Under the pieces are notes generated by a model. That model saw only the letters and a list, made by a program, of their open reading frames with translations, ran no database searches and had not been told where the DNA came from. From Macrostomum lignano (taxonomy: Eukaryota): 64,000 nucleotides of DNA. Location: assembly GCA_002269645.1 (NCBI GenBank), contig NIVC01001762.1, positions 62,001 to 126,000 of the forward strand, read 5' to 3'. Position 1 is the stretch's first letter, and each line of letters starts with the position of its first letter. The translations under genes were made by a program, and so were the position numbers. Below are positions 1 to 44,848 of the stretch, in pieces.

Positions 1-3000
1 GCAGCACTGGAAGGAGTCTGACACGTGAGCTGAATTTGCCTGCGGCTGTCAGTCGTTGGCAACTGACAGATTGAGTTTCAAGCTTGAATCCTGGGGAGTC
101 ATCCTGAATCTGCACTGAGAAATCCCTGAACCTGCCCTGAGGAATCGCTCCTGAACCTGTCCTGAGAAATCGCCTCTGAACCTGTCCTGAAAATCGCCCC
201 TGCGTCTGTCCTGAAGAATCGCCCCTGAGCCTGTGCTGAAGAATCGCCCCTGAACCTGTCCTGAGAAATCGCCTCTGAACCTGTCCTGAAGAATCGCCCC
301 TGCGTCTGTCCTGAAGAATCGCCCCTGAGCCTGTGCTGAAGAATCGCCCCTGAACCTGTCCTGAGGAATCGCCCCTGAACCTGTCCTGAGGAATCGCCTC
401 TGCAACTGTCCTGAAAAATCGCCCCTGAGCCTGTCCTGAAGAATCGCCCCTGAACCTGTCCTGAAGAATCGCCCCTGAGCCTGTCTCGAAGAATCGCCCC
501 TGCGTCTGTCCTGAGGAATCGCCCCTGAACCTGTCCTTAAAAATCGCCCCTGAACCTATCCTGAACAATCGCCCCTGAGCCTGTCCTGAAGAATCGCCCC
601 TGGACCTTTCTCGAAGAATCACCCCTGAAACTGTCCTGAAGAATCGCCCCTGAACCTGTCCTGAAGAATCGCCCCTGAGCCTGTCCTGAAGAATCGCCCC
701 TGAGCCTATCTCGAAGAATCGCCCCTGAACCTGTCCTGAAGAATCGCCCCTGAGCCTGTGCTGAGGAATCGCCCTTAATATCTACGAGTACTAGGATCCC
801 AAACCTGAACCCCTTAGAAATCTGACACGCGCTGATAGAAGAGAAAATTGCACTTTGCCAGGTCTTTGCCGCAATCACAATTAGCCAATAATTTTGTTTC
901 ACAAAATCGGATTCACAGCGAACCCATTTTTGCAGCCCTAGTTTTTGTCCCGCTGCCAGCCCTTGAGCTCCCATTTCTGCTCCGTTCGCTCCCCTTTCAC
1001 TGGACCTCTATTTCCCCTAACACTTGTTTGAACTTCTGCCCCACTGCTTCCCATGAGAGTCCCCCGCCCCCTCCCCCATTTTTATTGCCCCTCCTCCTCC
1101 TCGATTCCCATCTGACCCGGTTCCGCCACTGAGCTCACAGCAGCATTCGACTTCAATTTTTTGCTTTTTATATTGTTTAAAAAAGCGCATATTATCTCGT
1201 GTTGCCTACTAGCAGTAGGCTATTAAATATCTGCGTTTGGTTGCCTTTTTTACAGGCGAATTATCAGAAGTAGCAGGAAGGAAGGAAGGAAAGGAAGGAA
1301 AGGAAGGAAGGAAGGAAGGAAGGAAGGAAAGAAAGGAAGGAAGGAAGGAAGGAAGGAAAGAAAGGAAGGAAGGAAGGAAGGAAGGAAGGAAAGAAAGGAA
1401 GGAAGGAAGGAAGAAAGGAAGGAAAGGAAGGAAGGAAGGAAGGAAGGAAGGAAGGAAGGAAGGAAGGAAGGAAAGGAAGGAAGGAAGGAAGGAAGGAAGG
1501 AAAGAAAGGAAGGAAGGAAGGAAGGAAGGAAGGAAGGAAGGAAAGAAAGGAAGGAAGGAAGAAAGGAAGGAAAGGAAGGAAGGAAGGAAGGAAGGAAAGG
1601 AAGGAAGGAAAGAAGGAAGGAAAGAAAGGAAGGAAGGAAGGAAGGAAGGAAGGAAGGAAGGAAGGAAAGAAAGGAAGGAAGAAAGGAAGGAAAGGAAGGA
1701 AAGGAAGGAAGGAAAGAAAGGAAGGAAAGAAAAGAAGGAAGGAAGAAAGGAAGGAACGAAGGAAAGAAAGGAAGGAAGAAAGGAAGGAAAGGAAGAAAGG
1801 AAGGAAGGAAGGAAGGAAGGAAGGAAGGAAAGAAAGGAAGGAAGGAAGGAAGGAAGAAAGGAAGGAAAGGAAGGAAGGAAAGAAAGGAAGGAAGGAAAGA
1901 AAAGAAGGAAGGAAGAAAGGAAGGAAAGGAAGGAAGGAAGGAAGGAAGGAAGGAAGGAAGGAAGGAAAGAAAGGAAGGAAGGAAGGAAGGAAGGAAGGAA
2001 GGAAAGAAAGGAAGGAAGGAAGGAAGAAAGGAAGGAAAGGAAGGAAGGAAAGAAAGGAAGGAAAGAAAAGAAGGAAGGAAGAAAGGAAGGAAAGGAAGGA
2101 AGGAAAGAAGGAAGGAAAGAAAGGAAAGGAAGGAAGGAAGGAAGGAAAGAAAGGAAAGGAAGGAAGGAAGGAAGGAAAGGAAGGAAAGGAATTAAGGAAG
2201 ACAGAAACAGGGAAGGGAAGGGAAGGAAAGGAAGGAAGACAGAAGGCTCTGAATATCTCACAGTTAACCCCGGAATCGAGCCCCCGACGTTTGATTTAGG
2301 TTCTACTGTCAGCAATGTTTCAGACGGGAGAAGCCAGCTGCAATAACTAGATGTGTTTACCTGAACCCGGCAGGTACCAGCGCACGGCCAGCGCGGCCAA
2401 GGGCGCCAAGGAGCGGACCTCAGAGCTCACGCACAGCATGGCTAGCAGCTTCTCGCAGAAATGGTCATCAATGCGCAATTCTAACGCGTTTAAATCGTTC
2501 GAGGAGAAAGTTGGAAATGCCTACACCAATGTGAAGGTGAGTTACTATAGAGACCAAAGCAGCTCTCTGAATTGGCTTTGTTTTGCATCATCAGCTGACT
2601 GCAGCATTTGAAATCCCCGCCTCACCTCCGCTTCCTATTTGCGACAACACCTTAATTGCAGACGCGAACAAAGGTGCAGGTTTGAACTGTTGTGCCATGC
2701 CTATCCAGTGTTGTGCTGCGTCACTATAAGCTTTCAATGTTAGAGCAGGTTTATCTAAGATGTCATGGCTCGTGGGGGATTGCTAAGATGTCACGGCTCG
2801 TGGGGGGAATTGCTAAGATGTCACGGCTCGTGGGGGGATTGCTAAGATGTCACGGCTCGTGGGGGGATTGCTAAGATGTCACGGCTCGTGGGGGGATTGC
2901 TAAGATGTCACGGCTCGTGGGGGATTGCTAAGATGTCACGGCTCGTGGGGGGATTGCTAAGATGTCACGGCTCGTGGGGGGAATTGCTAAGATGTCATGG

Positions 3001-30118: not shown

Positions 30119-33100
30119 CTAAGCAGTCTTGAGCAGGTGGGCGAACAGCTCGGTCTGCAGCGAGTCTGTCTTCTCGAACTCTTTCGAGGCGATCTTGCAA
30201 TAATCCAGGATGCGCTTCCACAGCTGTCCGACTGTGCACTTGGCCGACTGCAGCTTCTCGGACACCTCCTCCAGCTGCCGCGGTTGAACGGGGATGGAAA
30301 TCCGATGCTTTCATTTTGTAAGATTAAATAATTATAACGAAAAACTCTATTTATGCTACTAACTAGAAATGAGAACTTCTACTGCTGCTACTAAATGCCG
30401 ATATGTTTCGAAATCTATTTAACCAGTCATAAATTTGCACTTACCCGGTCAACCCGAGAATCGGAAAATTTGTGATACTGCAGCACCGGCAGCTCCAGCT
30501 GGGAGGCCACCAGCCACTGCAGCAGAGACTTCAGCTGAGGGTCGCCGCCGAAGGCGCCGCAGCCCCAGTTGCCCGTGACAACGCCGCGGGGCGCGCTGGC
30601 AGTCAGCTCGGGACACTGAAGCGGGATGAAGAGCGAGGTGGGGGGCAACTGCTCGGGAGCTGATCTGCACACTACGGTCACTCCTTGGGCACTCCAAGTA
30701 GCACTCTGGACTTTCACTCTCCGTAGCACTCTGGACTGTCACTCCCCGTAGCACTCTGGACTGTCACTCCACGTGGCACTCTGGACTGTCACTCCACGTG
30801 GCACTCTGGACTGTCACTCTCCATAGCAGTCTGAACTGTCACTCCCCGTAGCACTCTGGACTGTCACTCCCCGTAGCACTCTGGACTGTCACTCCAAGTA
30901 GCACTCTGGACTGTCACTCCCCGTAGCACTCTGGACTGTCACTCCAAGTAGCACTCTGGACTGTCACTCCCCGTAGCACTCTGGACTGTCACTCCAAGTA
31001 GCACTCTGGACTGTCACTCCAAGTAGCACTCTGGACTTTCACTCTCCGTAGCACTCTGAACTGTCACTCCAAGCAGCACTCTGGACTTTCACTCTCCGTA
31101 GCACTCTAAACTATCACTCCAAGTAGCAGTCTGAACTGTCACTCCAAGTAGCACTCTGGACTTTTACTCTCCGTAGCACTCTGAACTATCACTCCAAGTA
31201 GCAGTCTGAACTGTCACTCCAAGTAACACTCTGGGCTTTCACTCAAGGAAGCACTGTTAGAAATAAAGACTAAAAAATGAAATTGAAATAATAGACAGAC
31301 AGACATGCTGGAACTAAAAGCGAGTACAAGAGCAAAAAATAACGTCGAAAAACGAGAAAATCCACATAAAAACATACGCTGCTCTTTTGCATAGCAAACT
31401 ACTTACTGAGTAGTTTAGATAATGATTGAACGTCGCTCACTGCTTTTCAATTAATGACTGCAAAAAATCGCTTTATTTGTTGTGAAACAGAGCAATTGTT
31501 TGTAAAGCCAGTCATTCAACGCCATGAGGACAGGCTCAGTCTCATTGAGGCATGCCGCAATTTAATCGATATGTAGGGCAAATGTGCACTGGGTGAGAAT
31601 AGGCATACATACGTACATGGGGTGGGAGAGTCATATGTACATGGGGTGGGAGAGGCATACGTACATGGGGTGGGAGAGGCATATGTACATGGGGTGGGAG
31701 AGGCATATGTACATGGGGTGGGAGAGGCATATGTACATGTACATGGGGTGGGAGAGGCATATGTACATGGGGTGGGAGAGGCATACGTACATGGGGTGGG
31801 AGAGGCATACGTACATGGGGTGGGAGAGGCATACGTACATGGGGTGGGGGAGAGGCATATGTACATGGGGTGGGAGAGGCATATGTACATGGGGTGGGGG
31901 AGAGGCATACGTACATGGGGTGGGGGAGAGGCATATGTACATGGGGTGGGAGAGGCATATGTACATGGGGTGGGGGAGAGGCATATGTACATGGGGTGGG
32001 GGAGAGGCATATGTACATGGGGTGGGGGAGAGGCATATGTACATGGGGTGTGGGATATCGTATATAATGAGCAAGCGGGTTCATTATAAAGGCCAAAACT
32101 CTCACCTGTTTATAAGACTGCCGAAATGCCACATAAGCCTTGTTGGTGTCGCGCAGCAGGTTCTGCTTAACGTACTGCTCAGCGGGGAAGCCGCGGTACG
32201 GCACGGCGTCCATGGAGACGAGGCGGCTCGGCAGAATGCCGGCTTCGTCCGGCTGGAGCGATTCGCGCACCTGCCCGGTGAATTTCATTTTCAGCCCGTA
32301 GCCGTCGGACTGGCTGAACGGCTCGTAGCCCATGATGTACACGGCCTCGTTGTTGTCCATGGCCTCCACAAACAGCATGGAGGTGATGAGCTCCGGGTTG
32401 TGCACGAACAGGGTCTCCTCCTGGGGTGGGGTTGGCGGCAGGGCTGGGTTTAACCATGAACTGACTACTTTTAGTAAGATGGGAGAGTCAGAGTACGGGA
32501 GAGATGGGGAGAAGGGGTGAATTGAGAAAGAGATGGGAGGGATGAGATGGGAGGGGATGAGATGGGAGGGGATGAGATGGGAGGGGATGAGATGGGAGGG
32601 GATGAGATGGGAGGGGATGAGATGGGAGGGGATGAGATGGGAGGGGATGAGATGGAAGGGGATGAGATGGAAGGGGATGAGATGGGAGGGGATGAGATGG
32701 GAGGGAATGAGATGGGAGGGAATGAGATGGGAGGGGATGAGATGGGAGGGGATGAGATGGAAGGGGATGAGATGGAAGGGGATGAGATGGGAGGGGATGA
32801 GATGGGAGGGGATGAGATGGGAGGGGATGAGATGGGAGGGGATGAGATGGGAGGGGATGAGATGGGAGGGGATGAGATGGGAGGGGATGAGATGGGAGGG
32901 GATGAGATGGGAAGGGATGAGATGGGAGGGGATGAGATGGGAGGCGATGAGATGGGAGGGGATGAGATGGGAGGCGATGAGATGGGAGGGGATGAGATGG
33001 GAGGGGATGAGATGGGAGGGGATGAGATGGGAGAGGATGAGATGGGAGGCGATGAGATGGGAGGGGATGAGATGGGAGGGGATGAGATGGGAGGGAATGA

Positions 33101-34505
33101 GATGGGAGGGAATGAGATGGGAGGGGATGAGATGGGAGGGAATGAGATGGGAGGGGATGGGATGGGAGGGAATGAGATGGGAGGGGATGAGATGGGAGGG
33201 GATGAGATGGGAGGGAATGAGATGGGAGGGAATGAGATGGGAGGGAATGAGATGGGAGGGGATGAGATGGGAGGGATGAGAAGCAGAAGACGCACCTGCA
33301 ACACGCCAGTCAAGAGCACCCCGCCGCCCAGGAAGCTGTTGCCAAAGCAGACGTGCAGCAGGTTGGTGTCGGCGTCCTTCATGGAGGCCTCGGGCTCCAC
33401 CAGCAAGCGGCAGAGCGGGCGGGAGCTGGCGGCCAGCTTGGCGGAGGTCAGCAGCTCCTTGGACGGCAAGACGGAGCGGGCGACAACCAGCTTGCCGGCG
33501 GGCAGGCCCTCCCGCTGCAGCCGTTCGAAGTAGCTGAGAACGCATTGCAGCTTCTCTGCTTGGTGCGGAGTCCTGCAGCAGAAATTATTAGCAGCAAATC
33601 CTTCACTGCTCTACTTATAGTAATACACTAGAAAATACTGTGAAAAATCGCTCACGCTTCCTGAATGGCGGCGAAGAAGGCGGGAAAGCCGTTGGCCGAC
33701 ATGCTGATGGCCAGGTCCTTGGGGTGCTGCGGCATCACGCAGAGGAACGCGGCCGACAATAGCGAGGATACGAACTCGCGACTTAGCACAGTGACCGAGG
33801 CTAGGGATTTTGATTGGGATTATTTAACTGTTAGACTGGTATACTCTGTACAGTATTCAGGCTGTAACACACTGTCCAGTCTGTAAGCACAGGCTGTAAC
33901 ACACTGTCCAGTCTGTAAGCAAAGGCTGTAACACACTGTCCAGTCTGTAAGCACAGGCTGTAACACACTGTCCAGTCTGTAAGCAAAGGCTGTAACACAC
34001 TGTCCAGTCTGTAAGCACAGGCTGTAACACACTGTCCAGTCTGTAAACAGGCTGTAAGCACAGGCTGTAACACACTGTCCAGTCTGTAAGCACAGGCTGT
34101 AACACACTGTGCAGTCTGTAAACAGGCTGTAAGCACAGGCTGTACCACACACAGAGCAGAGAGCATCTCACCCTCCTGCTGGCAGGCGTAGTTCAGGGGC
34201 TCCCTGCCAGCCTCCAAGGCCAGCACGCGGTCCACCAGGAAGGGCAGCAGGCCCTGGAAGAACTGCTTGCGCTGCTCATCGCTCATGCGCTGCTCAATGA
34301 ACCGGCGCAGTCCAGTGAAAAACGAGCGCGCGGAACCGGCGCCCGTGGCCGGGCTGACGTAGTTCAGCATGTACTCCTCGTGCAGGTCGTCCAGCACTTT
34401 CACCAGCGCTTCAGGGTTCGGCTCGATTCGCTTCAGGGCCTCCAGGTGGCGCTTCAGCTTGGGCCAATTGGCCAGGTCCGTTGGTAGGGCGACTGGCGTT
34501 GCCAT
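30119..34505 (-). CDS. PARG: Poly(ADP-ribose) glycohydrolase, compact ~465 aa; exons 34505-34172, 33800-33656, 33572-33296, 32420-32106, 30615-30445, 30274-30119
   Basis: PARG signature [11 protein letters not shown]|[29 protein letters not shown]; six exons phase-consistent, 1398 nt in total. Confidence 0.95.
30680..31250. repeat. 25-bp minisatellite CACTCCCCGTAGCACTCTGGACTGT (PARG intron 4)
   Basis: Direct reading. Confidence 0.93.
31605..32052. repeat. 24-26-bp minisatellite GAGAGGCATATGTACATGGGGTGG (PARG intron 4)
   Basis: Direct reading. Confidence 0.95.
32530..33280. repeat. 15-bp minisatellite GAGATGGGAGGGGAT (PARG intron 3, splits the Q|EE motif)
   Basis: Direct reading. Confidence 0.97.
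33855..34150. repeat. 32-bp minisatellite GTAACACACTGTCCAGTCTGTAAGCACAGGCT (PARG intron 1)
   Basis: Direct reading. Confidence 0.93.
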
Positions 34506-34889: not shown

Positions 34890-37538
34890 TCAGTAGCGCT
34901 GATGAAACGTCGAACTGGATGTCGACGGAGGCATCGGCGGAGGCGGCGGGGGCGGCGGCAGCATGAAGCTGACCCCGGCGTGGCTGGTGAAGGGGTTCGG
35001 CGGAGCGAAGCTGGCGGGCAGCAGCAGGTCCGGCAGGTTGGCCTCGGACACCGCGGTCGACGCTGCTGACGGATGTGGTGATGAAGAACCGGCGAGAAAT
35101 GAAGAAGCCGAGGAGGCTGGGGCGACGGCGTGGGAGGCGGCGGCTGCGGATGGGGCGGCGGGCGGGGCGAACGGGTTGAAGCGGGGCGCCACCCAGCTGG
35201 CGGATGGCTGCAGGCCGCGGCTCCAGTCATCTTTGTAGACCTGCACTGTGAGGCCGGGCACCAGGTGGGCCAGCCGGTTGGTCACGTGGGCCAGCACAAG
35301 CTGTTCGGAGGCGTCGCGGCGGACTCGAACCTGGGACATTGGGATTAGAATTTACTCTGCTTTTAAAGATTTTTACGAACAGAAAATAGGCGAAAAATGG
35401 CAAAAATTTTCTGAAAAATGACAGTCACTAATTGGATACACTGTACCTATCTGTACACAGACATGAATAGAGTACACAGACCTGTACACAGACACGAATA
35501 GAGTACACAGATCTGTACACAGACGCGAATAGAGTACACAGACCTGTACACAGACACGAATAGAGTACACAGATCTGTACACAGACGCGAATAGAGTACA
35601 CAGACCTGTACACAGACACGAATAGAGTACACAGACCTGTACACAGACACGAATAGAGTACACAGATCTGTACACAGACGCGAATAGAGTACACAGACCT
35701 GTACACAGACACGAATAGAGTACACAGACCTGTACACAGACACGAATAAAATAAACAGACCTGTACACAGACACGAACAGAACACACAGACCTGTACACA
35801 GTCATGAATAAACTACACAGAATACATCAAATAGGCCTCACCTGCAGGCAGCCGTTGAGCTGTCCGAAGCCGGTCAGCCAGGTGCGCTCCTTGCGAAGCT
35901 CCAGCACCCCGTCAAGCGTGGCGGCCTCGCCGAGCGCCTTGTCCAGCTGGCCGACCAGGTGAGCCGGGGTGCTCTGCAGCAGAATCTTGCCGCAGTAGGC
36001 GGCCATTGGCGCCATGGTCACCACGACAACGAAGGCGGCCAGTACGGCCATTGTGATGTCGGCCAGCGAGGACTGGTAGGCGTCGAGTAGGCAGCTGGCC
36101 AGGAACAGGCACATGGCCGAGGACACCCCCAGCAGGGCCAGGGGGTTCAGCCTGGGCAGCAGCAGCTTGCTCAGGCCCGGCACGTGATGGCACAGGCTCT
36201 CGCTGATGTCAGTCACGTGCTCCTGCAGCCAGCTGGACGTGCTGGCGTCGATCACGTGATTGTAGGCCGGGTTCTCCACGCTGGAGTGGGGGGGGGGAAC
36301 GGTTGGGCAATAAATGGAATCTGCGGCTGTGAAGGTATACGCAACTGTTACAGCCTTGTACACAGCCACAAACAGAAACCCACACACCTGTACACAGCCA
36401 CAAACAGAAATCCACACACCTGTACACAGCCACGAACAGAAACCCACACACCTGTACACAGCCACAAACAGAAACCCACACACCTGTACACAGCCACAAA
36501 CAGAAACCCACACACCTGTACACAGCCACAAACAGAAACCCACACACCTGTACACAGCCACAAACAGAAACCCACACACCTGTACACAGCCACAAACAGA
36601 AACCCACACACCTGTACACAGCCACAAACAGAAACCCACACACCTGTACACAGCCACAAACAGAAACCCACACACCTGTACACAGCCACAAACAGAAACC
36701 CACACACCTGTACACAGCCACAAACAGAAACCCACACACCTGTACATAGCCACAAACAGAAACCCACACACCTGTACACAGCCACAAACAGAAACCCACA
36801 CACCTGTACACAGCCACAAACAGAAACCCACACACCTGTACACAGCCACAAACAGAAACCCACACACCTGTACACAGCCACAAACAGAAACCCACACACC
36901 TGTACACAGCCACAAACAGAAACCCACACACCTGTACACAGCCACAAACAGAAACCCACACACTTGTACACAGCCACAAACAGAAACCCACACACCTGTA
37001 CACAGCCACAAACAGAAACCCACACACCTGTACACAGCCACAAACAGAAACCCACACACCTGTACACAGCCACTAGATGCACCACGAGTCCAACGAGGCC
37101 GCCAAGCGCCAGGCCGCTAGGCGTGACATCGGGCGGTTCGAAGGCCCGCTCCACGCACTCCTTCAGCACGAAGAACACGCCGAGGATGGCCAGCATCAGG
37201 GAGGCGAACACCGCCAGCACTTCGAATCGCTCGTAGCCGAACGTGTAGGCCAGACAGCGCTGGCGCCGCTCAACCCAGAGGCTGACCAGGGCGACGCCGA
37301 TGTAGCACAGGTCAAACAGCAGCAGGCAGGTGAAGGCGCCCAGGGTCATGCTCGGGTTCAGGTGGCCCCACACAGTCAGCAGGCACACGCTGATCAGCAG
37401 GAGGCCTCCAACGGCCAGGATTCGCTTGGCCCGCTTCTCCTCGGCCTGCAGCATGGCCAGCTGCACCGCCAGCTCCCTGACAAATGCCACTACATTGCTG
37501 TAGGCGTCCCTGAGCTCGTGCAGCAGCGCTAGAATTGC
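34890..37538 (-). CDS. SLC30A6: Zinc transporter ZnT6 (cation diffusion facilitator); exons 37538-37060, 36280-35842, 35330-34890; start-codon exon not located
   Basis: YTFGYERFEVLAVFAS, STSSWLQEHV, GKILLQSTPAHLVGQLDK, RRDASEQLVLAHVTNRL, TVQVYKDDW match SLC30A6 motifs; phases 2 and 0 consistent. Confidence 0.93.
35440..35820. repeat. 31-bp minisatellite TGTACACAGACACGAATAGAGTACACAGACC (ZnT6 intron)
   Basis: Direct reading. Confidence 0.93.
36355..37073. repeat. 32-bp minisatellite, about 22 copies, spanning the ZnT6 exon/intron junction
   Basis: Sense unit GTGGCTGTGTACAG|GTGTGTGGGTTTCTGTTT; the first copy is partly coding. Confidence 0.95.
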
Positions 37539-37619
37539 CTGCGCATAACAACGGCATAACAACGGCATAACAACGGAACGATTGGAGTAAAATGGAGTAG
37601 AAACAAAATTATAGTTTAG

Positions 37620-38907: not shown

Positions 38908-39690
38908 CGTGAATGAGTGAATGGGTGAATGAGTGAATGGGTGAATGAGTGAATGGGTGAATGAGTGAATGGGTGAATGAGTGAATGAGTGAATGAGTGA
39001 ATGGGTGAATGAGTGAATGAGTGAATGGGTGAATGAGTGAATGAGTGAATGGGTGTATGAGTGAATGAGTGAATGAGTGAATGAGTAAATGGGTGAATGA
39101 GTGAATGGGTGAATGAGTGAATGGGTGAATGAGTGAATGAGTGAATGAGTGAATGGGTGAATGAGTGAATGGGTGAATGAGTGAATGAGTGAATGAGTGA
39201 ATGGGTGAATGAGTGAATGAGTGAATGGGTGAATGAGTGAATGAGTGAATGGGTGAATGGGTGAATGAGTGAATGAGTGAATGAGTGAATGAGTGAATGG
39301 GTGAATGAGTGAATGAGTGAATGGGTGAATGAGTGAATGGGTGAATGAGTGAATGAGTGAATGAGTGAATGGGTGAATGAGTGAATGAGTGAATGGGTGA
39401 ATGAGTGAATGAGTGAATGGGTGAATGGGTGAATGAGTGAATGAGTGAATGAGTGAATGGGTGAATGAGTGAATGGGTGAATGAGTAAATGGGTGAATGA
39501 GTGAATGAGTGAATGAGTGAATGGGTGAATGAGTGAATGGGTGAATGGGTGAATGAGTGAATGAGTGAATGAGTGAATGAGTAAATGGGTGAATGAGTGA
39601 ATGGGTGAATGGGTGAATGAGTGAATGAGTAAATGAGTGAATGGGTGAATGGGTGAATGAGTGAATGGGTGAATGGGTGAATGAGTGAAG
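38908..39690. repeat. (TGAATGAG/TGAATGGG)n microsatellite
   Basis: Direct reading. Confidence 0.97.
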
Positions 39691-40747
39691 CAGATTGGAA
39701 ACAGGAATTTTAGGCACGGGTGTTTGTCACTGCTGCTGGAGCTGAGGGTTGGGTACGGGTGTCAGAGATGGGAGTCAGAGATGGGTGTCAGAGATCGGTG
39801 TCAGAGATGGGTGTCAGAGATCGGTGTCAGAGATGAGAGTCAGAGATGGGAGTCAGAGATGGGTGTCAACGCTTAATTTATCAAGCGTTGCCTTGTGCTG
39901 AGGAGCCGCTGAGGCCCGAGAATCAAGCAATATGCGCGCACCTTGGCATAGAAAACAACACGCAGGAATAAAAAGCATTTTACTAAAAAAGCGAAATCAG
40001 AAAAACATCACACAGCAAAACAAAAACAGTATGGAGATACAACAGAATTCATTATTTTTATCGCGAAAGATTAACAAACGATAATGATTAATTATTGTTT
40101 ATATGCAAAAAATTGGAAATTTTTTACAAATCAGGGTTGCGGTTGGGTCATTAGGTGGGTCATTGGGTGGGTTTTGAGTGGGTGATTGGGTGGGTCATTA
40201 GTGGGTCATTAGTTGGGTTATTAGGGTCAATGGGTGGGTTTGGAGTGGATGATTGGGTCGGATATTAGGGGGGGGGGGTTGATTGGGTGGGTCATTAGTG
40301 CGTGATGTCACCTAATAACGATGGGAATGTAGAATTTCAAGCCCATGCTACTAACAGTAGCTGGAATGAACTCGCACCGATTTGAATTCAGGTCACAGCT
40401 GTCACAGTTTTTCGGACTCGGGCAATGAATATGAATGAAACAGAGCTATAGAAACACAAATAACGACAGGTTGACAAGTTGAGTGGTAAAAACTGCCGAT
40501 GTTAAAAAGGCCAGCAAGTGCTTCTGTGGCCGCTAGCTTTAGGCGGGTTACAAAATTATGTAAAAACGAATGAATCTTGATTGTAATTAGCCGAGCTGTA
40601 CAGAAAAAACTACGGAAAAACCGATAAAAAATCCTCAGTTGACTACTGAGTCAGTAGAAATATCAGGGTATTGCTGGTAAAACTTGATAAATTTAGTCAC
40701 AAAATGACATAATCGCATTTTAGATAACGGAAGGACTCCGGCCAAGG

Positions 40748-42270
40748 TCATCGCTGTCCAGCCGGCTGGCGCTGCTGCTGAGCGATGGCCAGAGTGCGGG
40801 CGAACTCGCGCAACTCCTCCACGCAGTGCTGCCCAATGTCGCGCAGAGCTTCGCGCAGAGCGTCGCGCACCGGGCCTTCCAAGCTGGAATTCTTGCTAAC
40901 CAGCACTTTGGCCACCACAGCGAAGGTGTCGCAGTCCTGCCTGTAGGCTCGCTCCAATTCGGCCTTCTTGGCGCGCACCAGACGCAGGATGCCGTCGCCG
41001 GCATCGGCGCTAACGCCGTGATTGTCGGCGTCGCAAAACGGCGGCTGCGACATCTGCGGCAACGACGGCGGCTGAAGCGGCGTTGCCAAGGACGATGTCG
41101 AAGGCCGAGCCGATGTTGTTGGCGGCGGCGGCGACGGTGGAGGCGGAGGCGGCGGAGAAGACACGGGCGGCGGCGATGGCGGAGACCTCGGTCCCAGCCG
41201 CCGGGGCTCGACGCCGCCATTCGAATTGTCGATGCCGTTGTTTGCCGCTGATGCTGACGTCGCCGCGGCCTCCTCGTCCTCCTCTGGCGGGCTGCGCGGG
41301 CCCCGACGGGCGGCGCTTCGAGTGCTGCTGCTCCTGCTGGGGCTGCGGCTGCGGCTGGTCGGGCTGCGGCTGCGACTGCGGCGGCGCTGGCTGCCAGACC
41401 GACTGCGGTTCTGCTTAGCGGGTGAGGGGGATCGGAAGGCATGTGAGAGTCTTGTTGGATAGAGGTACACGAGGCACTGGATTACTTTGCAGTGGGCGCG
41501 TGTAGTGCAGCTGTAGATAGGAGAATGACAACAGGGAGGGACTGAGGTCACTGCTCAATTGTATTATAAGGAAAATGAGGAACAGGTGAGAGACAAGTGA
41601 AGGACAGGGGAGAGATAGACAAGAGACAGGTGAGGGACAGGAAAGAGACAGGTGAGGGACAGGAAAGAGACAGGTGAGGGACAGGCAAAAGACAGGCAAG
41701 GGATAGGCAAGGGACAGGCAAGGGACAGGCAAAAGACAGGTGAGGGACAGGCAAGAGACAGGTGAGGGACAGGCAAGAGACAGGTGAGGGACAGGAAAGA
41801 GACAGGTGAGACAATACAAGAGGCAAGGGTGGCTGAGGCCCCAAGCTGGAGTCGGCGCGCACCTGCTGTCCGAATCGCCAGCCAGGCGCGGGCGGCGGCG
41901 ACCGGGAGCCGGAGAGTCCGCGGCCCTCCTGCGCCCGCTGAACTCGAGCCCTCAGCTGCGGGTCGGCCCGGACCCGCTGCCGGGCGCGGATCATGTCCTT
42001 GAACCAGACTATGCTGACTTTGCAGCCGAGCAGGCCGGACTCATTGTACCGGCGCATGATCTGCTTGGCAACTTCGTGAGAATCGAATCGCAGGGCGATG
42101 TTCAGCGCAGCCTGGCTGCCCGTGTAGGAGAAAAAATCGATGGAACAGTCGGCCTCTTTGTCGATAAAGTAGCGACGAACTTCGTCGGCTTTGATGCGCG
42201 ACGGCAGGCCCCGGATGTACAGGCAGTGACGGGACGGCGCGACCAGCGCCGGGTCTACGGCGTCGTTCAT
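40748..42270 (-). CDS. PPHLN1: RRM + RS-rich + Periphilin-1 C-terminal domain protein; exons 42270-41863, 41410-40748
   Basis: C-terminus ELERAYRQDCDTFAVVAKVLVSKNSSLEGPVRDALREALRDIGQHCVEELREF resembles periphilin-1 (EIEQVYRQDCETFGMVVKML...IGERCVEEL). Exon 1 has RNP2-like LYIRGL and an RRM-like pattern. RS dipeptides in the linker; phase 0 intron. Confidence 0.8.
41590..41815. repeat. 22-bp minisatellite GAGACAGGTGAGGGACAGGAAA (periphilin-like intron)
   Basis: Direct reading. Confidence 0.9.
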
Positions 42271-42384
42271 GGCCAATGGCTGCTGGCTGCCTCTGGCACG
42301 GGCATGGGGTGGTTTGCAGCAATCAATAAAAGTACACTGATACCGTTATTATAAGCTGCTTCTCTTAAGTTTGTGTGCATTAAA

Positions 42385-42530
42385 CAAAAGTATTCGCGTA
42401 CTTAAAAAGTACTCGCACACTTAAAAGTATGCGCGCACTTAAAAAGTACTCGCGCACTTGAAAGTAGGCGCGCACTTAAAAAGTACTCGCGTACTTAGAA
42501 AGTACTCGCGCCCTTAAGAAGTACTCTCGT
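42385..42530. repeat. ~20-bp quasi-palindromic repeat AAGTACTCGCG(C/T)ACTTAAA
   Basis: About 7 copies. Confidence 0.85.
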
Positions 42531-42889
42531 AGTGGAAAAATCTTACGATAGAAAACATTTTTAATGCAAAAATTATCTTATAAAAAGTTCAAACATCTAT
42601 TAGTAATTTTCGTGCAGGTTAACTTTGTAAAGTACAAATGCACTATCGGAAGTTCCGAAGACTAAGTTACAAGTCTCTACTTATTCAATTACAGCAGTTT
42701 GCTATCTTGACAACCAAAACCTACTCAACATGAGCTAACTAAAAACATTAGTCTGGTTCTTATTAAAAACAGAAAATTAAGCAATAAAGTCAGCGATCCA
42801 GCTCTAATAATCGATAACTAACAATTTCCCGTCCCGTATAATATCGGTTAACAGGACAAACCGAAGTTCGGTGTCATTATTATTATTAT

Positions 42890-43482
42890 TATTATTGAAA
42901 TTTTTCAATTTCTATCAATCAACTATTCGGACAGATATAAGCTGCGATAAACCAGTTCGAATAAATGAAAATTCGGGATAAAAATATACTTCGAATATAA
43001 ATAGATAGAAGAGAATTAATTATACTGAGCTGAGCAATGAAGGCCTACGCAGTGATGGACTGGCCAAAAACTCAAAATACAAGGAAGCGATAAGATCTGT
43101 GTAACTGCGAGTCCAAGTTTGAGTAAGCCGGCAAACTGCTTCCATAATGCCGACTGAAGACTTGCTAGCAGAGATTATAATAATTATATTATTATAATTA
43201 TTATTGAAATTTTTCAATTTCTATCAATCAACTATTCGGACAGATATAAGCTGCGATAAACCAGTTCGAATAAATGAAAATTCGGGATAAAAATATACTT
43301 CGAATATAAATAGATAGAAGAGAATTAATTATACTGAGCTGAGCAATGAAGGCTTACGCAGTGATGGACTGGCCAAAAACTCAAAATACAAGGAAGCGAT
43401 AAGATCTGTGTAACTGCGAGTCCAAGTTTGAGTAAGCCGGCAAACTGCTTCCATAATGCCGACTGAAGACTTGCTAGCAGAG
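42890..43482. repeat. Tandem duplication of ~309 bp of unique AT-rich sequence
   Basis: TTATTGAAATTTTTCAATTTC...GACTTGCTAGCAGAGA occurs at 42892 and 43201. Confidence 0.93.
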
Positions 43483-43494
43483 ACTTGCTAGCTA

Positions 43495-43504
43495 GCACAG
43501 ACAC

Positions 43505-43589
<85 letters not shown>

Positions 43590-43610
43590 TACAGACAGAC
43601 ATACAGACAC

Positions 43611-43647
<37 letters not shown>

Positions 43648-43702
43648 AAGACAGACAGACAGACAGAAAGACAGACAGGCAGAGACAGACAGACAGACAG
43701 AC

Positions 43703-43775
<73 letters not shown>

Positions 43776-43790
43776 CTAAGACAGACAGAC

Positions 43791-43855
<65 letters not shown>

Positions 43856-43924
43856 TACAGACACACAGACACACAGACAGACAGACAGACAGACAGACAC
43901 ACAGACAGACAGACATACAGACAC

Positions 43925-43968
<44 letters not shown>
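43495..43968. repeat. (CAGA)n microsatellite
   Basis: Direct reading. Confidence 0.97.
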
Positions 43969-43969
<1 letters not shown>

Positions 43970-44444: not shown

Positions 44445-44848
44445 TTACCCTACTATCAGTAGGCAACCCGTGAGTCTTTAAATTAAATAATTCCGCATCC
44501 TCTTCACCCTACTATCAGTAGGCAACCAGTGAGTTTTAAATAAAATAATTCCGCATCCTCCTCACTCTACTATCAATAGGCAACCAGCGAGTTTTTAAAT
44601 TAAATAATTCCATGTCCTCTTCATCACTCTACTAACAGTAGGCAACCAGCGAGTTTTCAAATTAAATAATTCCATGTCCTCTTCATCACTCTACTAACAG
44701 TAGGCAACCAGCGAGTTTTCAAGTTAAATAATTCCATGTCCTCTTCATCACTCTACTAACAGTAGGCAGCAAGCGAGTTCTCAAATTAAATAATTCCATG
44801 TCCTCTTCATCACTCTACTAACAGTAGGCAACCAGCGAGTTTTCAAAT
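44445..44848. repeat. ~61-bp tandem repeat immediately 3' of the NHE stop codon
   Basis: CTACTA(T/A)CAGTAGGCAACCAGCGAGTTTT...TCCTCTTCATCACT, about 7 copies. Confidence 0.9.

What the first reader, a model, noticed from the sequence alone, without database searches (positions are those of the whole stretch)
40748..42270. Periphilin (HUSH subunit) C-terminal domain fused to an RRM and RS region
The C-terminal helices closely follow the periphilin-1 dimerisation/TASOR-binding domain. Vertebrate periphilin binds RNA through a disordered N-terminus, and HUSH has been studied mainly in vertebrates. Here the domain is joined to a folded RRM-like module and an RS-rich linker, i.e. an SR-protein-like architecture. 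This suggests an invertebrate RNA-guided silencing or splicing-coupled adaptor, possibly an ancestral or alternative HUSH-like system, in a very repeat-rich genome. I cannot tell whether this architecture is already catalogued.
Basis: partly seen in the sequence, partly recalled or inferred. Interest (0 to 1): 0.75.

Follow-up and report, generated by a model that had tools for sequence, protein, structure and literature searches.

The report
Flatworm periphilin gene with an RRM
This is an ordinary two-exon gene of the flatworm Macrostomum lignano encoding its version of periphilin, in which a folded RNA-recognition motif and an arginine/serine-rich linker precede the periphilin dimerisation domain. 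That layout turns out to be the usual one across invertebrates rather than a new fusion.

Summary
On the minus strand, exon 1 (42270-41863) and exon 2 (41410-40748) join in phase 0 across a GT-AG intron to give a 356-aa protein. It is identical to the annotated Macrostomum lignano protein BOX15_Mlig022724g1.

The C-terminus is a true Periphilin_C domain (Pfam 80 bits; PDB 6swg E=2.9e-14; model TM 0.92, rmsd 0.5 Å). The four human residues tested for dimerisation and TASOR binding are conserved.

The N-terminus is a divergent RRM. It is below the Pfam threshold on its own, but it has a confident βαββαβ model, all top 50 Foldseek matches are RRMs, and 28 of 31 orthologous domains hit RRM_1. An RS-rich then Pro-rich disordered linker joins the two domains.

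An exhaustive HMMER search found 74 proteins with this N-domain, and 40 also carry Periphilin_C. They come from flatworms, nematodes (C. elegans Y57G11C.9), a nematomorph, annelids, echinoderms, a hemichordate and amphioxus; none looked vertebrate. UniProt already auto-names them "RRM domain-containing" or "Periphilin-1 C-terminal domain-containing". So this is one more member of a catalogued but unstudied family.

I found no paper discussing the architecture. RNA binding, a TASOR-like partner and a silencing role are all inferred.

The parts
42271..42300 (-). Annotated 5' extension (untranslated leader) of the gene model, upstream of the ATG
   Evidence: P0001 begins RARGSQQPLA before the Met. 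The called gene is 1553 bp, equal to 40748-42300. An in-frame stop lies at 42348-42346.
41863..42270 (-). Coding exon 1, aa 1-136: N-terminal motif, RRM, basic helix and start of the linker
42004..42225 (-). RRM core, aa 16-89 (β1 16-23, α1 28-37, β2 42-49, β3 55-62, α2 65-75, β4 86-89)
   Evidence: AF2 pLDDT is 92-97. All top 50 Foldseek PDB matches are RRMs, with target-normalised TM-score up to 0.78. The family profile hits nucleolin, PABP, PUB1, La and hnRNP H RRMs. RRM_1 matches 28 of 31 orthologous domains.
41920..41994 (-). Basic helical extension after β4, aa 93-117 (8 R/K, 2 D/E), starting from the family motif W89-F90-K-D92
   Evidence: Secondary structure; conservation; charge count.
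41411..41862 (-). Intron of 452 nt, GT...AG, containing a 22-bp tandem repeat at 41582-41811
40748..41410 (-). Coding exon 2, aa 137-356 plus the TGA stop at 40750-40748
41291..41410 (-). RS-rich region, aa 137-176
   Evidence: 72% R+S, with 55% of residues in RS/SR dipeptides. Modelled as disordered, pLDDT <50.
41033..41203 (-). Pro/Ser-rich disordered segment, aa 206-262 (24 Pro in 57 residues)
40769..41008 (-). Periphilin C-terminal helical hairpin, aa 271-350 (helices 271-309 and 311-350)
   Evidence: Pfam PF25234 at 80.2 bits. 6swg sequence match E=2.9e-14. Model against 6swg_B: target-normalised TM-score 0.92, rmsd 0.5 Å, 42% identity. L306, L313, V317 and L336 correspond to human L326, L333, I337 and L356.

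Best explanation
The locus is the Macrostomum lignano periphilin-family gene Mlig022724.g1. It is one of two paralogues, and each is present on two near-identical contigs.

The protein has three parts:
- a divergent N-terminal RRM with a basic helical extension;
- a disordered RS-rich then Pro-rich linker of about 150 aa;
- the periphilin C-terminal helical hairpin.

This is the common invertebrate form of periphilin. Vertebrate periphilin keeps the hairpin but has a disordered Arg/Tyr-rich N-terminus in place of the RRM.

Proposed mechanism, by homology with human periphilin. The C-terminal hairpins homodimerise through L306, L313 and V317. Each then offers a leucine-zipper face, including L336, to a helical segment of a TASOR-like scaffold. 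The RRM, basic helix and RS region bind nascent RNA. Together they would tether a chromatin- or RNA-processing complex to transcripts.

Shown here: the gene model, the identity of both domains, conservation of the tested interface residues, and the phylogenetic spread of the architecture.

Inferred: RNA binding, dimerisation, a TASOR-like partner, and any silencing output.

My confidence in the identity and architecture is about 0.95. My confidence in the HUSH-like adaptor mechanism is about 0.4.
For: Gene model and junction.

Periphilin_C:
- Pfam 80.2 bits against a cut-off of 27.
- 6swg E=2.9e-14.
- AF2 pLDDT 95-97, and Foldseek against 6swg_B gives TM 0.92, rmsd 0.5 Å.
- Human L326, L333 and I337 (dimer) and L356 (TASOR contact; L356R abolishes silencing, PMC7544229) align to L306, L313, V317 and L336. 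These positions stay hydrophobic in all 21 aligned sequences.

RRM:
- βαββαβ model with domain pLDDT 89.8 and pTM 0.75.
- All top 50 Foldseek matches are RRMs.
- The family profile against PDB sequences gives nucleolin 1e-10, PABP 1e-9, PUB1 4e-6 and La 1e-5.
- RRM_1 matches 28 of 31 orthologous domains, best 2.2e-11.

Architecture is widespread:
- 74 N-domain relatives, 40 of them with Periphilin_C.
- Taxa.
- Both Pfam thresholds are passed by the C. elegans, amphioxus, Owenia and Clonorchis proteins.

Context:
- Human periphilin is the RNA-binding HUSH subunit and binds through its N-terminus, and tethering it to RNA makes the N-terminus dispensable (PMC11754731).
- TASOR-like proteins (DUF3715-SPOC-DomI) exist in invertebrates (PMC10578480).
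- Both folded domains are about 50% identical between the two Macrostomum paralogues, while the best local alignment reaches only 18% of the query. This fits purifying selection on both domains.
Against: - The Macrostomum RRM is degenerate. It is below the Pfam threshold. RNP1 position 3 is Asn57, where 35 of 53 relatives have Phe or Tyr. RNP1 position 5 is an invariant Ala across the family instead of the canonical aromatic. Canonical RNA stacking is therefore doubtful.
- HUSH has been described as vertebrate-specific (PMC7532188).
- Whether C. elegans has a HUSH-like complex is stated to be unknown (PMC7649781).
- The conserved leucines could simply maintain the hairpin or dimer rather than a TASOR interface.
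- The C. elegans orthologue is regulated by alternative splicing coupled to NMD, alongside SR-protein genes (PMC5777819). That fits a splicing factor as well as it fits a silencing adaptor.
Confidence: 0.5

Rival explanations
1. It is an SR-related splicing or mRNP factor. The RRM and RS region act in pre-mRNA processing, and Periphilin_C serves only as a dimerisation module. There is no HUSH-type chromatin silencing in flatworms.
For: - An RRM followed by an RS-rich stretch (46% RS/SR content in the best 50-aa window).
- RS-rich linkers recur in orthologues, for example 72% in C. elegans.
- NCBI names some orthologues 'serine/arginine repetitive matrix protein 1-like'.
- C. elegans Y57G11C.9 is listed among endogenous NMD-target isoform genes together with rsp-5, rsp-6, rsp-7 and hrpf-1. 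That is the typical autoregulation of splicing factors.
- HUSH has been called vertebrate-specific.
Against: - The residue whose mutation breaks TASOR binding in human periphilin (L356) is conserved, as are the dimer residues.
- TASOR-like proteins exist in invertebrates.
- The RS stretch is short, internal and poorly conserved. The Macrostomum paralogue P0002 has only 28%.
- This reading and the HUSH-like reading are not mutually exclusive, since human HUSH senses intronless RNA.
Confidence: 0.3
2. The N-terminal domain is a pseudo-RRM used for protein-protein contacts, or is occluded by its own C-terminal helix. In that case any RNA contact comes only from the basic and RS-rich regions, as in vertebrate periphilin.
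For: - An invariant Ala sits at RNP1 position 5, and Asn at RNP1 position 3 in both Macrostomum paralogues.
- Family-specific invariant motifs lie outside the canonical RNP sites: S13-x-H15 before β1 and W89-F90-[KR]-D92 after β4.
- Structural neighbours include protein-binding or non-canonical RRMs: raver1 RRM1 bound to vinculin, the ALY RBD, and SRSF6 RRM2.
Against: - The RNP2 aromatic (Y18; Phe in 49 of 53) and two near-invariant arginines expected on the same sheet face (R20, R61) are kept.
- Most orthologues pass RRM_1.
- No partner is known.
Confidence: 0.15
3. The architecture is a gene-model artefact: the two exons belong to different transcripts.
For: None beyond the a priori possibility. 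The intron is full of a 22-bp repeat, and the annotated protein is flagged 'partial'.
Against: - The annotated protein is identical across the junction.
- The splice sites are canonical GT-AG in phase 0.
- The same N-to-C order occurs in the paralogue and in 40 relatives from many phyla.
- An identical protein is called on two contigs.
Confidence: 0.02

Closest known systems
Human periphilin-1 (PPHLN1), subunit of the HUSH complex (PDB 6swg)
   Same: - C-terminal helical hairpin: 49% identity over 59 aa, model TM 0.92 and rmsd 0.5 Å.
- Dimer and TASOR-contact residues are conserved.
- A Ser-rich, low-complexity middle region.
- An N-terminal part expected to contact RNA.
   Different: - The human N-terminus is a disordered Arg/Tyr-rich self-aggregating region with no recognised RNA-binding domain.
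- The flatworm protein has a folded RRM plus a basic helix, and a linker without any Tyr.
- No vertebrate protein appeared among the 74 relatives of the N-domain. None is more than 65% identical to the human C-domain.
C. elegans Y57G11C.9 (UniProt Q9U203) and the other invertebrate 'RRM domain-containing / Periphilin-1 C-terminal domain-containing' proteins
   Same: - The same three-part architecture.
- The N-domain shows family motifs S-x-H, RGLP, A-x-RF and WF[KR]D.
- Periphilin_C sits at the extreme C-terminus.
   Different: - The Macrostomum copies are the most divergent in the RRM. They fail the Pfam RRM_1 threshold and have Asn at RNP1 position 3.
- Macrostomum has two paralogues with different intron positions.
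- None of these proteins has a published function.
S. pombe Tas3 of the RITS complex
   Same: Douse et al. proposed this as the functional analogue of periphilin: a small, largely unstructured protein with C-terminal helical self-association that binds a SPOC/PIN scaffold, Chp1, which resembles TASOR.
   Different: No sequence similarity was tested or seen here. Tas3 couples to Argonaute and small RNAs, not to an RRM.
SR and SR-related proteins
   Same: An N-terminal RRM followed by an RS-rich region. Structural neighbours include Npl3, Tra2β and SRSF6 RRMs.
   Different: The RS stretch is short (about 40 aa), internal and followed by a folded domain. The RNP1 motif is degenerate.

Membership tests
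Periphilin family (Pfam PF25234 Periphilin_C) | C-terminal domain scores above the Pfam gathering threshold | tested here: met
   80.2 bits against a cut-off of 27, E=1.4e-22, aa 279-341. The paralogue P0002 scores 83.6 bits.
Periphilin family (Pfam PF25234 Periphilin_C) | Helical-hairpin fold as in the TASOR-periphilin core structure 6swg | tested here: met
   AF2 helices 271-309 and 311-350 have pLDDT 95-97. Foldseek against 6swg_B gives target-normalised TM-score 0.92 and rmsd 0.5 Å over 69 columns.
Periphilin family (Pfam PF25234 Periphilin_C) | Hydrophobic dimer-interface residues (human L326, L333, I337) and the TASOR-contact leucine (L356) | tested here: met
   They align to L306, L313, V317 and L336. 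The columns read L 21/21; L 20 and I 1; L, I, V or M 21/21; L 17 plus V, I or M 4.
HUSH complex subunit (functional periphilin) | Forms a 2:1 complex with TASOR and acts with MPP8, SETDB1 and MORC2 in H3K9me3 silencing | not testable with these tools
   No way to search the M. lignano proteome or to co-fold complexes here. The literature says only that TASOR-like proteins occur in invertebrates.
HUSH complex subunit (functional periphilin) | Disordered Arg/Tyr-rich self-aggregating N-terminal domain, as in vertebrate periphilin | tested here: not met
   The N-terminus is a folded RRM. The linker is RS- and Pro-rich and has no Tyr. This is a feature of the vertebrate protein, not of the Pfam family.
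RRM (Pfam PF00076 RRM_1) | βαββαβ fold | tested here: met
   Secondary-structure order β1-α1-β2-β3-α2-β4. All top 50 Foldseek PDB matches are RRMs, with rmsd as low as 2.3 Å over about 80 residues.
RRM (Pfam PF00076 RRM_1) | Sequence score above the Pfam gathering threshold | tested here: not met
   12.1-14.7 bits against 20.7 for this protein, and no hit for P0002. It is met by orthologues (C. elegans 35 bits; 28 of 31 N-domains at E<=0.01) and by the family profile against PDB RRMs.
RRM (Pfam PF00076 RRM_1) | Canonical RNP2 and RNP1 aromatic residues on β1 and β3 | tested here: inconclusive
   The RNP2 aromatic is present (Y18). RNP1 position 3 is Asn57 and RNP1 position 5 is the invariant Ala59. 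The motif definition comes from general knowledge of RRMs.
SR proteins (definition recalled from the Manley and Krainer nomenclature: RRM(s) plus a C-terminal RS domain of at least 50 aa with more than 40% RS) | RS domain of at least 50 aa with more than 40% RS content | tested here: inconclusive
   The best 50-aa window (119-168) has 46% of its residues in RS/SR dipeptides. The continuous RS run is only about 40 aa, 137-176.
SR proteins (definition recalled from the Manley and Krainer nomenclature: RRM(s) plus a C-terminal RS domain of at least 50 aa with more than 40% RS) | RS domain lies at the C-terminus | tested here: not met
   The RS stretch is internal. It is followed by 180 aa that include the folded periphilin domain.

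The most novel reading that the evidence does not exclude
RRM-periphilin is the ancestral RNA reader of a HUSH-like, TASOR-containing silencing complex that predates vertebrates. In this reading a folded RRM, rather than a disordered Arg/Tyr region, selects nascent transcripts, and the RRM was lost on the vertebrate stem after the split from cephalochordates. HUSH-type genome surveillance would then be studiable in C. elegans and in the transgenic flatworm Macrostomum.
Probability: 0.3. Interest if true: 0.7.

Novelty: new member of a known kind. Interest (0 to 1): 0.4.

Why it matters
For this window, the result is an ordinary conserved gene with a correct two-exon model.

At the family level it is a useful pointer. 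Papers on HUSH state that no subunit has a recognised RNA-binding domain (PMC11754731) and call HUSH vertebrate-specific (PMC7532188). Yet invertebrate periphilin relatives, including one in C. elegans, carry an RRM directly upstream of the TASOR-binding hairpin.

If these proteins act with the TASOR-like proteins already noted in invertebrates, two things follow. The origin of RNA-directed, HUSH-type silencing moves back to early bilaterians. It also becomes testable in genetically tractable invertebrates.

If they do not, Periphilin_C is a more general dimerisation module of RNA-processing proteins, and its use in HUSH is the derived state.

Tried and rejected
- Word-index protein searches did not give the taxonomic survey I wanted. 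The full-length query found only the two Macrostomum proteins. The C-terminal domain alone found nothing. A 21-sequence C-domain profile found only 4 short fragments. The survey therefore rests on the exhaustive N-domain HMMER search, a local Periphilin_C HMM and 30 cluster look-ups.
- I suspected that some nematode relatives (P0034, P0052, P0062, P0066) end in a BESS-like motif. Pfam gave no such hit for the three I scanned (P0066 was not scanned), so I dropped the idea.
- The supplement of Schöpp et al. 2023, which might list TASOR-like proteins by phylum, is not held.
- The gene identifiers Mlig022724 and Mlig019216 appear in no paper text.
- Overlapping ORFs in other frames and on the antisense strand (for example 41806-42354 +, 40826-41251 +, 40720-41442 -) have no Pfam match. 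I take them as by-products of GC-rich coding sequence and the intronic repeat.
- The neighbouring PARG gene (31542-33545) is curious given that TASOR is a pseudo-PARP, but I have no evidence of a link and treat it as coincidence.
I could not map conserved residues onto the β-sheet surface or see whether the C-terminal helix covers it.
Full report
**What is in the sequence**

The minus strand between 42270 and 40748 carries a two-exon coding gene.
- Exon 1 runs from the ATG at 42270 to 41863 (408 nt, 136 codons).
- A 452-nt intron follows (41862-41411), beginning GT and ending AG after a pyrimidine-rich tract.
- Exon 2 runs from 41410 to the TGA at 40750-40748 (663 nt).
- The junction is in phase 0 and the product is 356 aa.

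Third-codon GC is 0.80 and 0.77 in the exons. Overall GC is 0.65 and 0.69 in the exons, 0.54 in the intron and 0.49 in the whole window. The intron holds a 22-bp tandem repeat at 41582-41811. This repeat explains the repetitive ORFs listed there. Overlapping ORFs in other frames and on the antisense strand have no Pfam match.

**Source and gene model**

The spliced product is 100% identical over its full length to NCBI protein BOX15_Mlig022724g1 of the flatworm Macrostomum lignano (P0001). P0001 reads straight through the proposed junction...GWRFGQQ|NRSRSG....
- The gene is called on two contigs of assembly GCA_002269645.1 and spans 1553 bp, which equals window 40748-42300.
- The window is 100% identical to NIVC01001762.1 over the 5553 bp compared. 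The second copy, NIVC01000592.1, is 99.5% identical over 3419 bp of that stretch.
- A paralogue, BOX15_Mlig019216g2 (P0002, 332 aa), has the same domain order. Its intron positions differ.

**C-terminal domain**

- Pfam Periphilin_C (PF25234) matches aa 279-341 at E=1.4e-22, 80.2 bits against a cut-off of 27.
- The only solved relative is human periphilin-1 in the TASOR-periphilin core complex 6swg, at E=2.9e-14.
- AlphaFold2 with a 30-sequence alignment predicts two long helices, 271-309 and 311-350, with pLDDT 95-97.
- Foldseek superposes them on 6swg_B with target-normalised TM-score 0.92, rmsd 0.5 Å and 42% identity.

Prigozhin et al. (PMC7544229) showed that human L326, L333 and I337 form the dimer interface. 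They also showed that L356 contacts TASOR and that L356R abolishes silencing. Chain position 27 of 6swg corresponds to residue 300 (18 tag residues plus residues 292-367 make the 94-residue chain). With that numbering the four residues align to L306, L313, V317 and L336 in the flatworm protein. All four columns stay hydrophobic in the 21 aligned family members.

**N-terminal domain**

On its own the Macrostomum sequence only grazes Pfam RRM_1. It scores 12-14.7 bits against a cut-off of 20.7, although the match covers profile positions 1-69 of 70. Three further lines show that it is an RRM.

1. Structure. The full-length model (pLDDT 92-97 in this domain) and a domain-only model (mean pLDDT 89.8, pTM 0.75) both give β1 16-23, α1 28-37, β2 42-49, β3 55-62, α2 65-75 and β4 86-89, followed by a helical extension to about residue 117. 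All of the top 50 PDB matches of the domain model are RRMs. Examples are Pes4 RRM3 (target-normalised TM 0.73), Mip6 RRM3 (0.78, rmsd 2.3 Å), Npl3, PABPN1, ALY, Tra2β and U1A.
2. Profile against PDB sequences. A profile of 31 orthologous N-domains hits nucleolin (1e-10), PABP (1e-9), PUB1 (4e-6), ZCRB1, La (1e-5) and hnRNP Q, H and A1.
3. Orthologues. 28 of those 31 domains hit RRM_1 at E<=0.01, the best at 2.2e-11.

The domain is nevertheless atypical.
- The family keeps the RNP2 aromatic (Y18; Phe in 49 of 53).
- It has an invariant Ala at RNP1 position 5.
- In both Macrostomum paralogues RNP1 position 3 is Asn, where 35 of 53 relatives have Phe or Tyr.
- It has its own near-invariant motifs: S13-x-H15 before β1, R20-G21, A59-x-R61-F62 and W89-F90-[KR]-D92.
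- The helix after β4 is strongly basic, with 8 R/K against 2 D/E.

**Linker**

Residues about 120-270 are predicted disordered, mostly pLDDT <50. Residues 137-176 are 72% Arg+Ser. The best 50-aa window (119-168) has 46% of its residues in RS/SR dipeptides. Residues 206-262 contain 24 prolines. RS-rich linkers recur in orthologues but vary widely, from 72% in the C. elegans protein to 28% in the Macrostomum paralogue. "SR-like" is a fair description. Membership of the SR protein family is not: the RS stretch is short and internal.

**How common the architecture is**

An exhaustive HMMER search of 1.84 billion representative proteins with the N-domain profile returned 74 proteins at E<=1e-3, 38 of them at E<=1e-10. 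A local HMM of the periphilin domain finds that domain at the C-terminus of 40 of the 74. Most of the rest are fragments or truncated models.

Source names for 30 of them cover these groups:
- flatworms: Clonorchis, Calicophoron, Dibothriocephalus, Protopolystoma, Macrostomum;
- nematodes: C. elegans Y57G11C.9/Q9U203, C. bovis, Diploscapter, Auanema, Pristionchus, Steinernema, Bursaphelenchus, Globodera, Thelazia, Plectus, Aphelenchoides;
- a nematomorph: Gordionus;
- annelids: Dimorphilus, Owenia;
- echinoderms: Amphiura, Acanthaster;
- a hemichordate: Ptychodera, where the protein is named "periphilin-1-like";
- amphioxus.

All but one of the unlabelled hits are nearest to one of these, though for several the identity is low. 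None is more than 65% identical to the human C-domain, so none looks like a vertebrate periphilin. The C. elegans, amphioxus, Owenia and Clonorchis proteins pass the Pfam gathering thresholds for both RRM_1 and Periphilin_C. UniProt auto-names many of them "RRM domain-containing protein" or "Periphilin-1 C-terminal domain-containing protein".

The architecture is therefore the usual invertebrate form and is already catalogued by automatic annotation. The Macrostomum genes are simply its most divergent members in the RRM.

**Literature**

In the held library I found no paper that links periphilin with an RRM or describes an invertebrate periphilin.
- Y57G11C.9 appears in only three papers; in the one I opened it is one entry in a gene list. 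That paper lists it among endogenous NMD-target isoform genes, next to the SR-protein genes rsp-5, rsp-6 and rsp-7 (PMC5777819).
- HUSH papers state that HUSH is "vertebrate-specific" (PMC7532188).
- Schöpp et al. report TASOR-like proteins (DUF3715-SPOC-DomI) in invertebrates (PMC10578480).
- A C. elegans review leaves open whether HUSH-like complexes exist there (PMC7649781).

**Most likely mechanism**

By homology, the C-terminal hairpin dimerises and offers a leucine-zipper face to a helical partner. The obvious candidate is a TASOR-like scaffold. The RRM, basic helix and RS region contact RNA. The protein would then tether a chromatin or RNA-processing complex to nascent transcripts.

- Shown here: the gene model, both domain identities, conservation of the experimentally tested interface residues, and the spread of the architecture.
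- Inferred: RNA binding, dimerisation, the partner and the output.
- Confidence: about 0.95 for the identity and about 0.4 for the HUSH-like mechanism.

The main rival (about 0.3) is an SR-related splicing or mRNP factor that uses Periphilin_C only to dimerise. The RS region and the SR-gene-like NMD regulation of the worm orthologue support it. A second rival, orthogonal to the first, is that the degenerate RRM is a protein-binding pseudo-RRM (about 0.15). A gene-model artefact is essentially excluded (about 0.02).

**Verdict**

The locus itself is a new member of a known kind. The family-level point has modest but real interest and appears undiscussed in the papers I could search. Invertebrate periphilins carry a folded RRM where vertebrate periphilin has a disordered RNA-binding region, and this makes the antiquity of HUSH testable in C. 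elegans and Macrostomum.

Noticed in passing
window 41582-41811 (inside the intron 41411-41862): A 22-bp tandem repeat (about 10.4 copies, consensus ACAGGTGAGGGACAGGAAAGAG on the + strand) fills half of the intron. It produces long repetitive ORFs in several frames that are not genes.
   Followed up: partly
window 42386-42526: A 19-bp tandem repeat (about 7.5 copies, AAAAGTACTCGCGCACTTA) lies about 90 bp upstream of the annotated 5' end of the gene. Whether it has any promoter role is unknown.
   Followed up: no
window 38909-39689, 43497-43969, 42878-43483, 44450-44848: Dense satellites flank the gene: a 16-bp unit x49, (ACAG)n x119, a 309-bp unit x2 and a 62-bp unit x6.5. They account for the long 'HSFTHS...' and 'CLSVCLSV...' ORFs.
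   Followed up: no
window 31542-33545 (-) and 36348-37568 (-); upstream gene seen in L002 1-7719: The neighbouring genes are a poly(ADP-ribose) glycohydrolase (PARG_cat_C, E=4e-26), a cation-efflux (ZnT-type) transporter (E=1.6e-15) and, upstream, a Na+/H+ exchanger. I have no evidence of a functional link to the periphilin gene.
   Followed up: partly
L001 and L002 (GCA_002269645.1 contigs NIVC01001762.1 and NIVC01000592.1): The gene and its downstream neighbours are present on two contigs. The window equals NIVC01001762.1, and the other copy is 99.5% identical in the gene with diverged flanking repeats. This fits the duplicated Macrostomum genome.
   Followed up: partly
L003 3001-6140 and L004 3001-6139 (paralogue P0002): The paralogue Mlig019216.g2 has at least three coding blocks, with an intron inside the RRM. 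Intron positions are therefore not shared with the window's gene.
   Followed up: partly
P0013 (UniProt A0A1I8F5Z8, M. lignano, 784 aa): A 'Na_H_Exchanger domain-containing protein' model carries a fragment of this RRM at residues 435-475. It is probably an older merged gene model of the periphilin gene with its upstream Na+/H+ exchanger neighbour.
   Followed up: no
P0052, P0034, P0062, P0066 (nematode relatives; Aphelenchoides and unnamed): The same RRM type occurs without Periphilin_C. P0052 joins it to a NIF phosphatase and BRCT domains, though this may be a merged model. The four share another short C-terminal motif (...LP...R.KL...) that has no Pfam match in the three I scanned.
   Followed up: partly
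C. elegans Y57G11C.9 (P0030): The worm orthologue is listed among genes that produce NMD-targeted alternative isoforms, alongside the SR-protein genes rsp-5, rsp-6 and rsp-7 (PMC5777819). This hints at autoregulation of the kind seen in splicing factors.
   Followed up: partly
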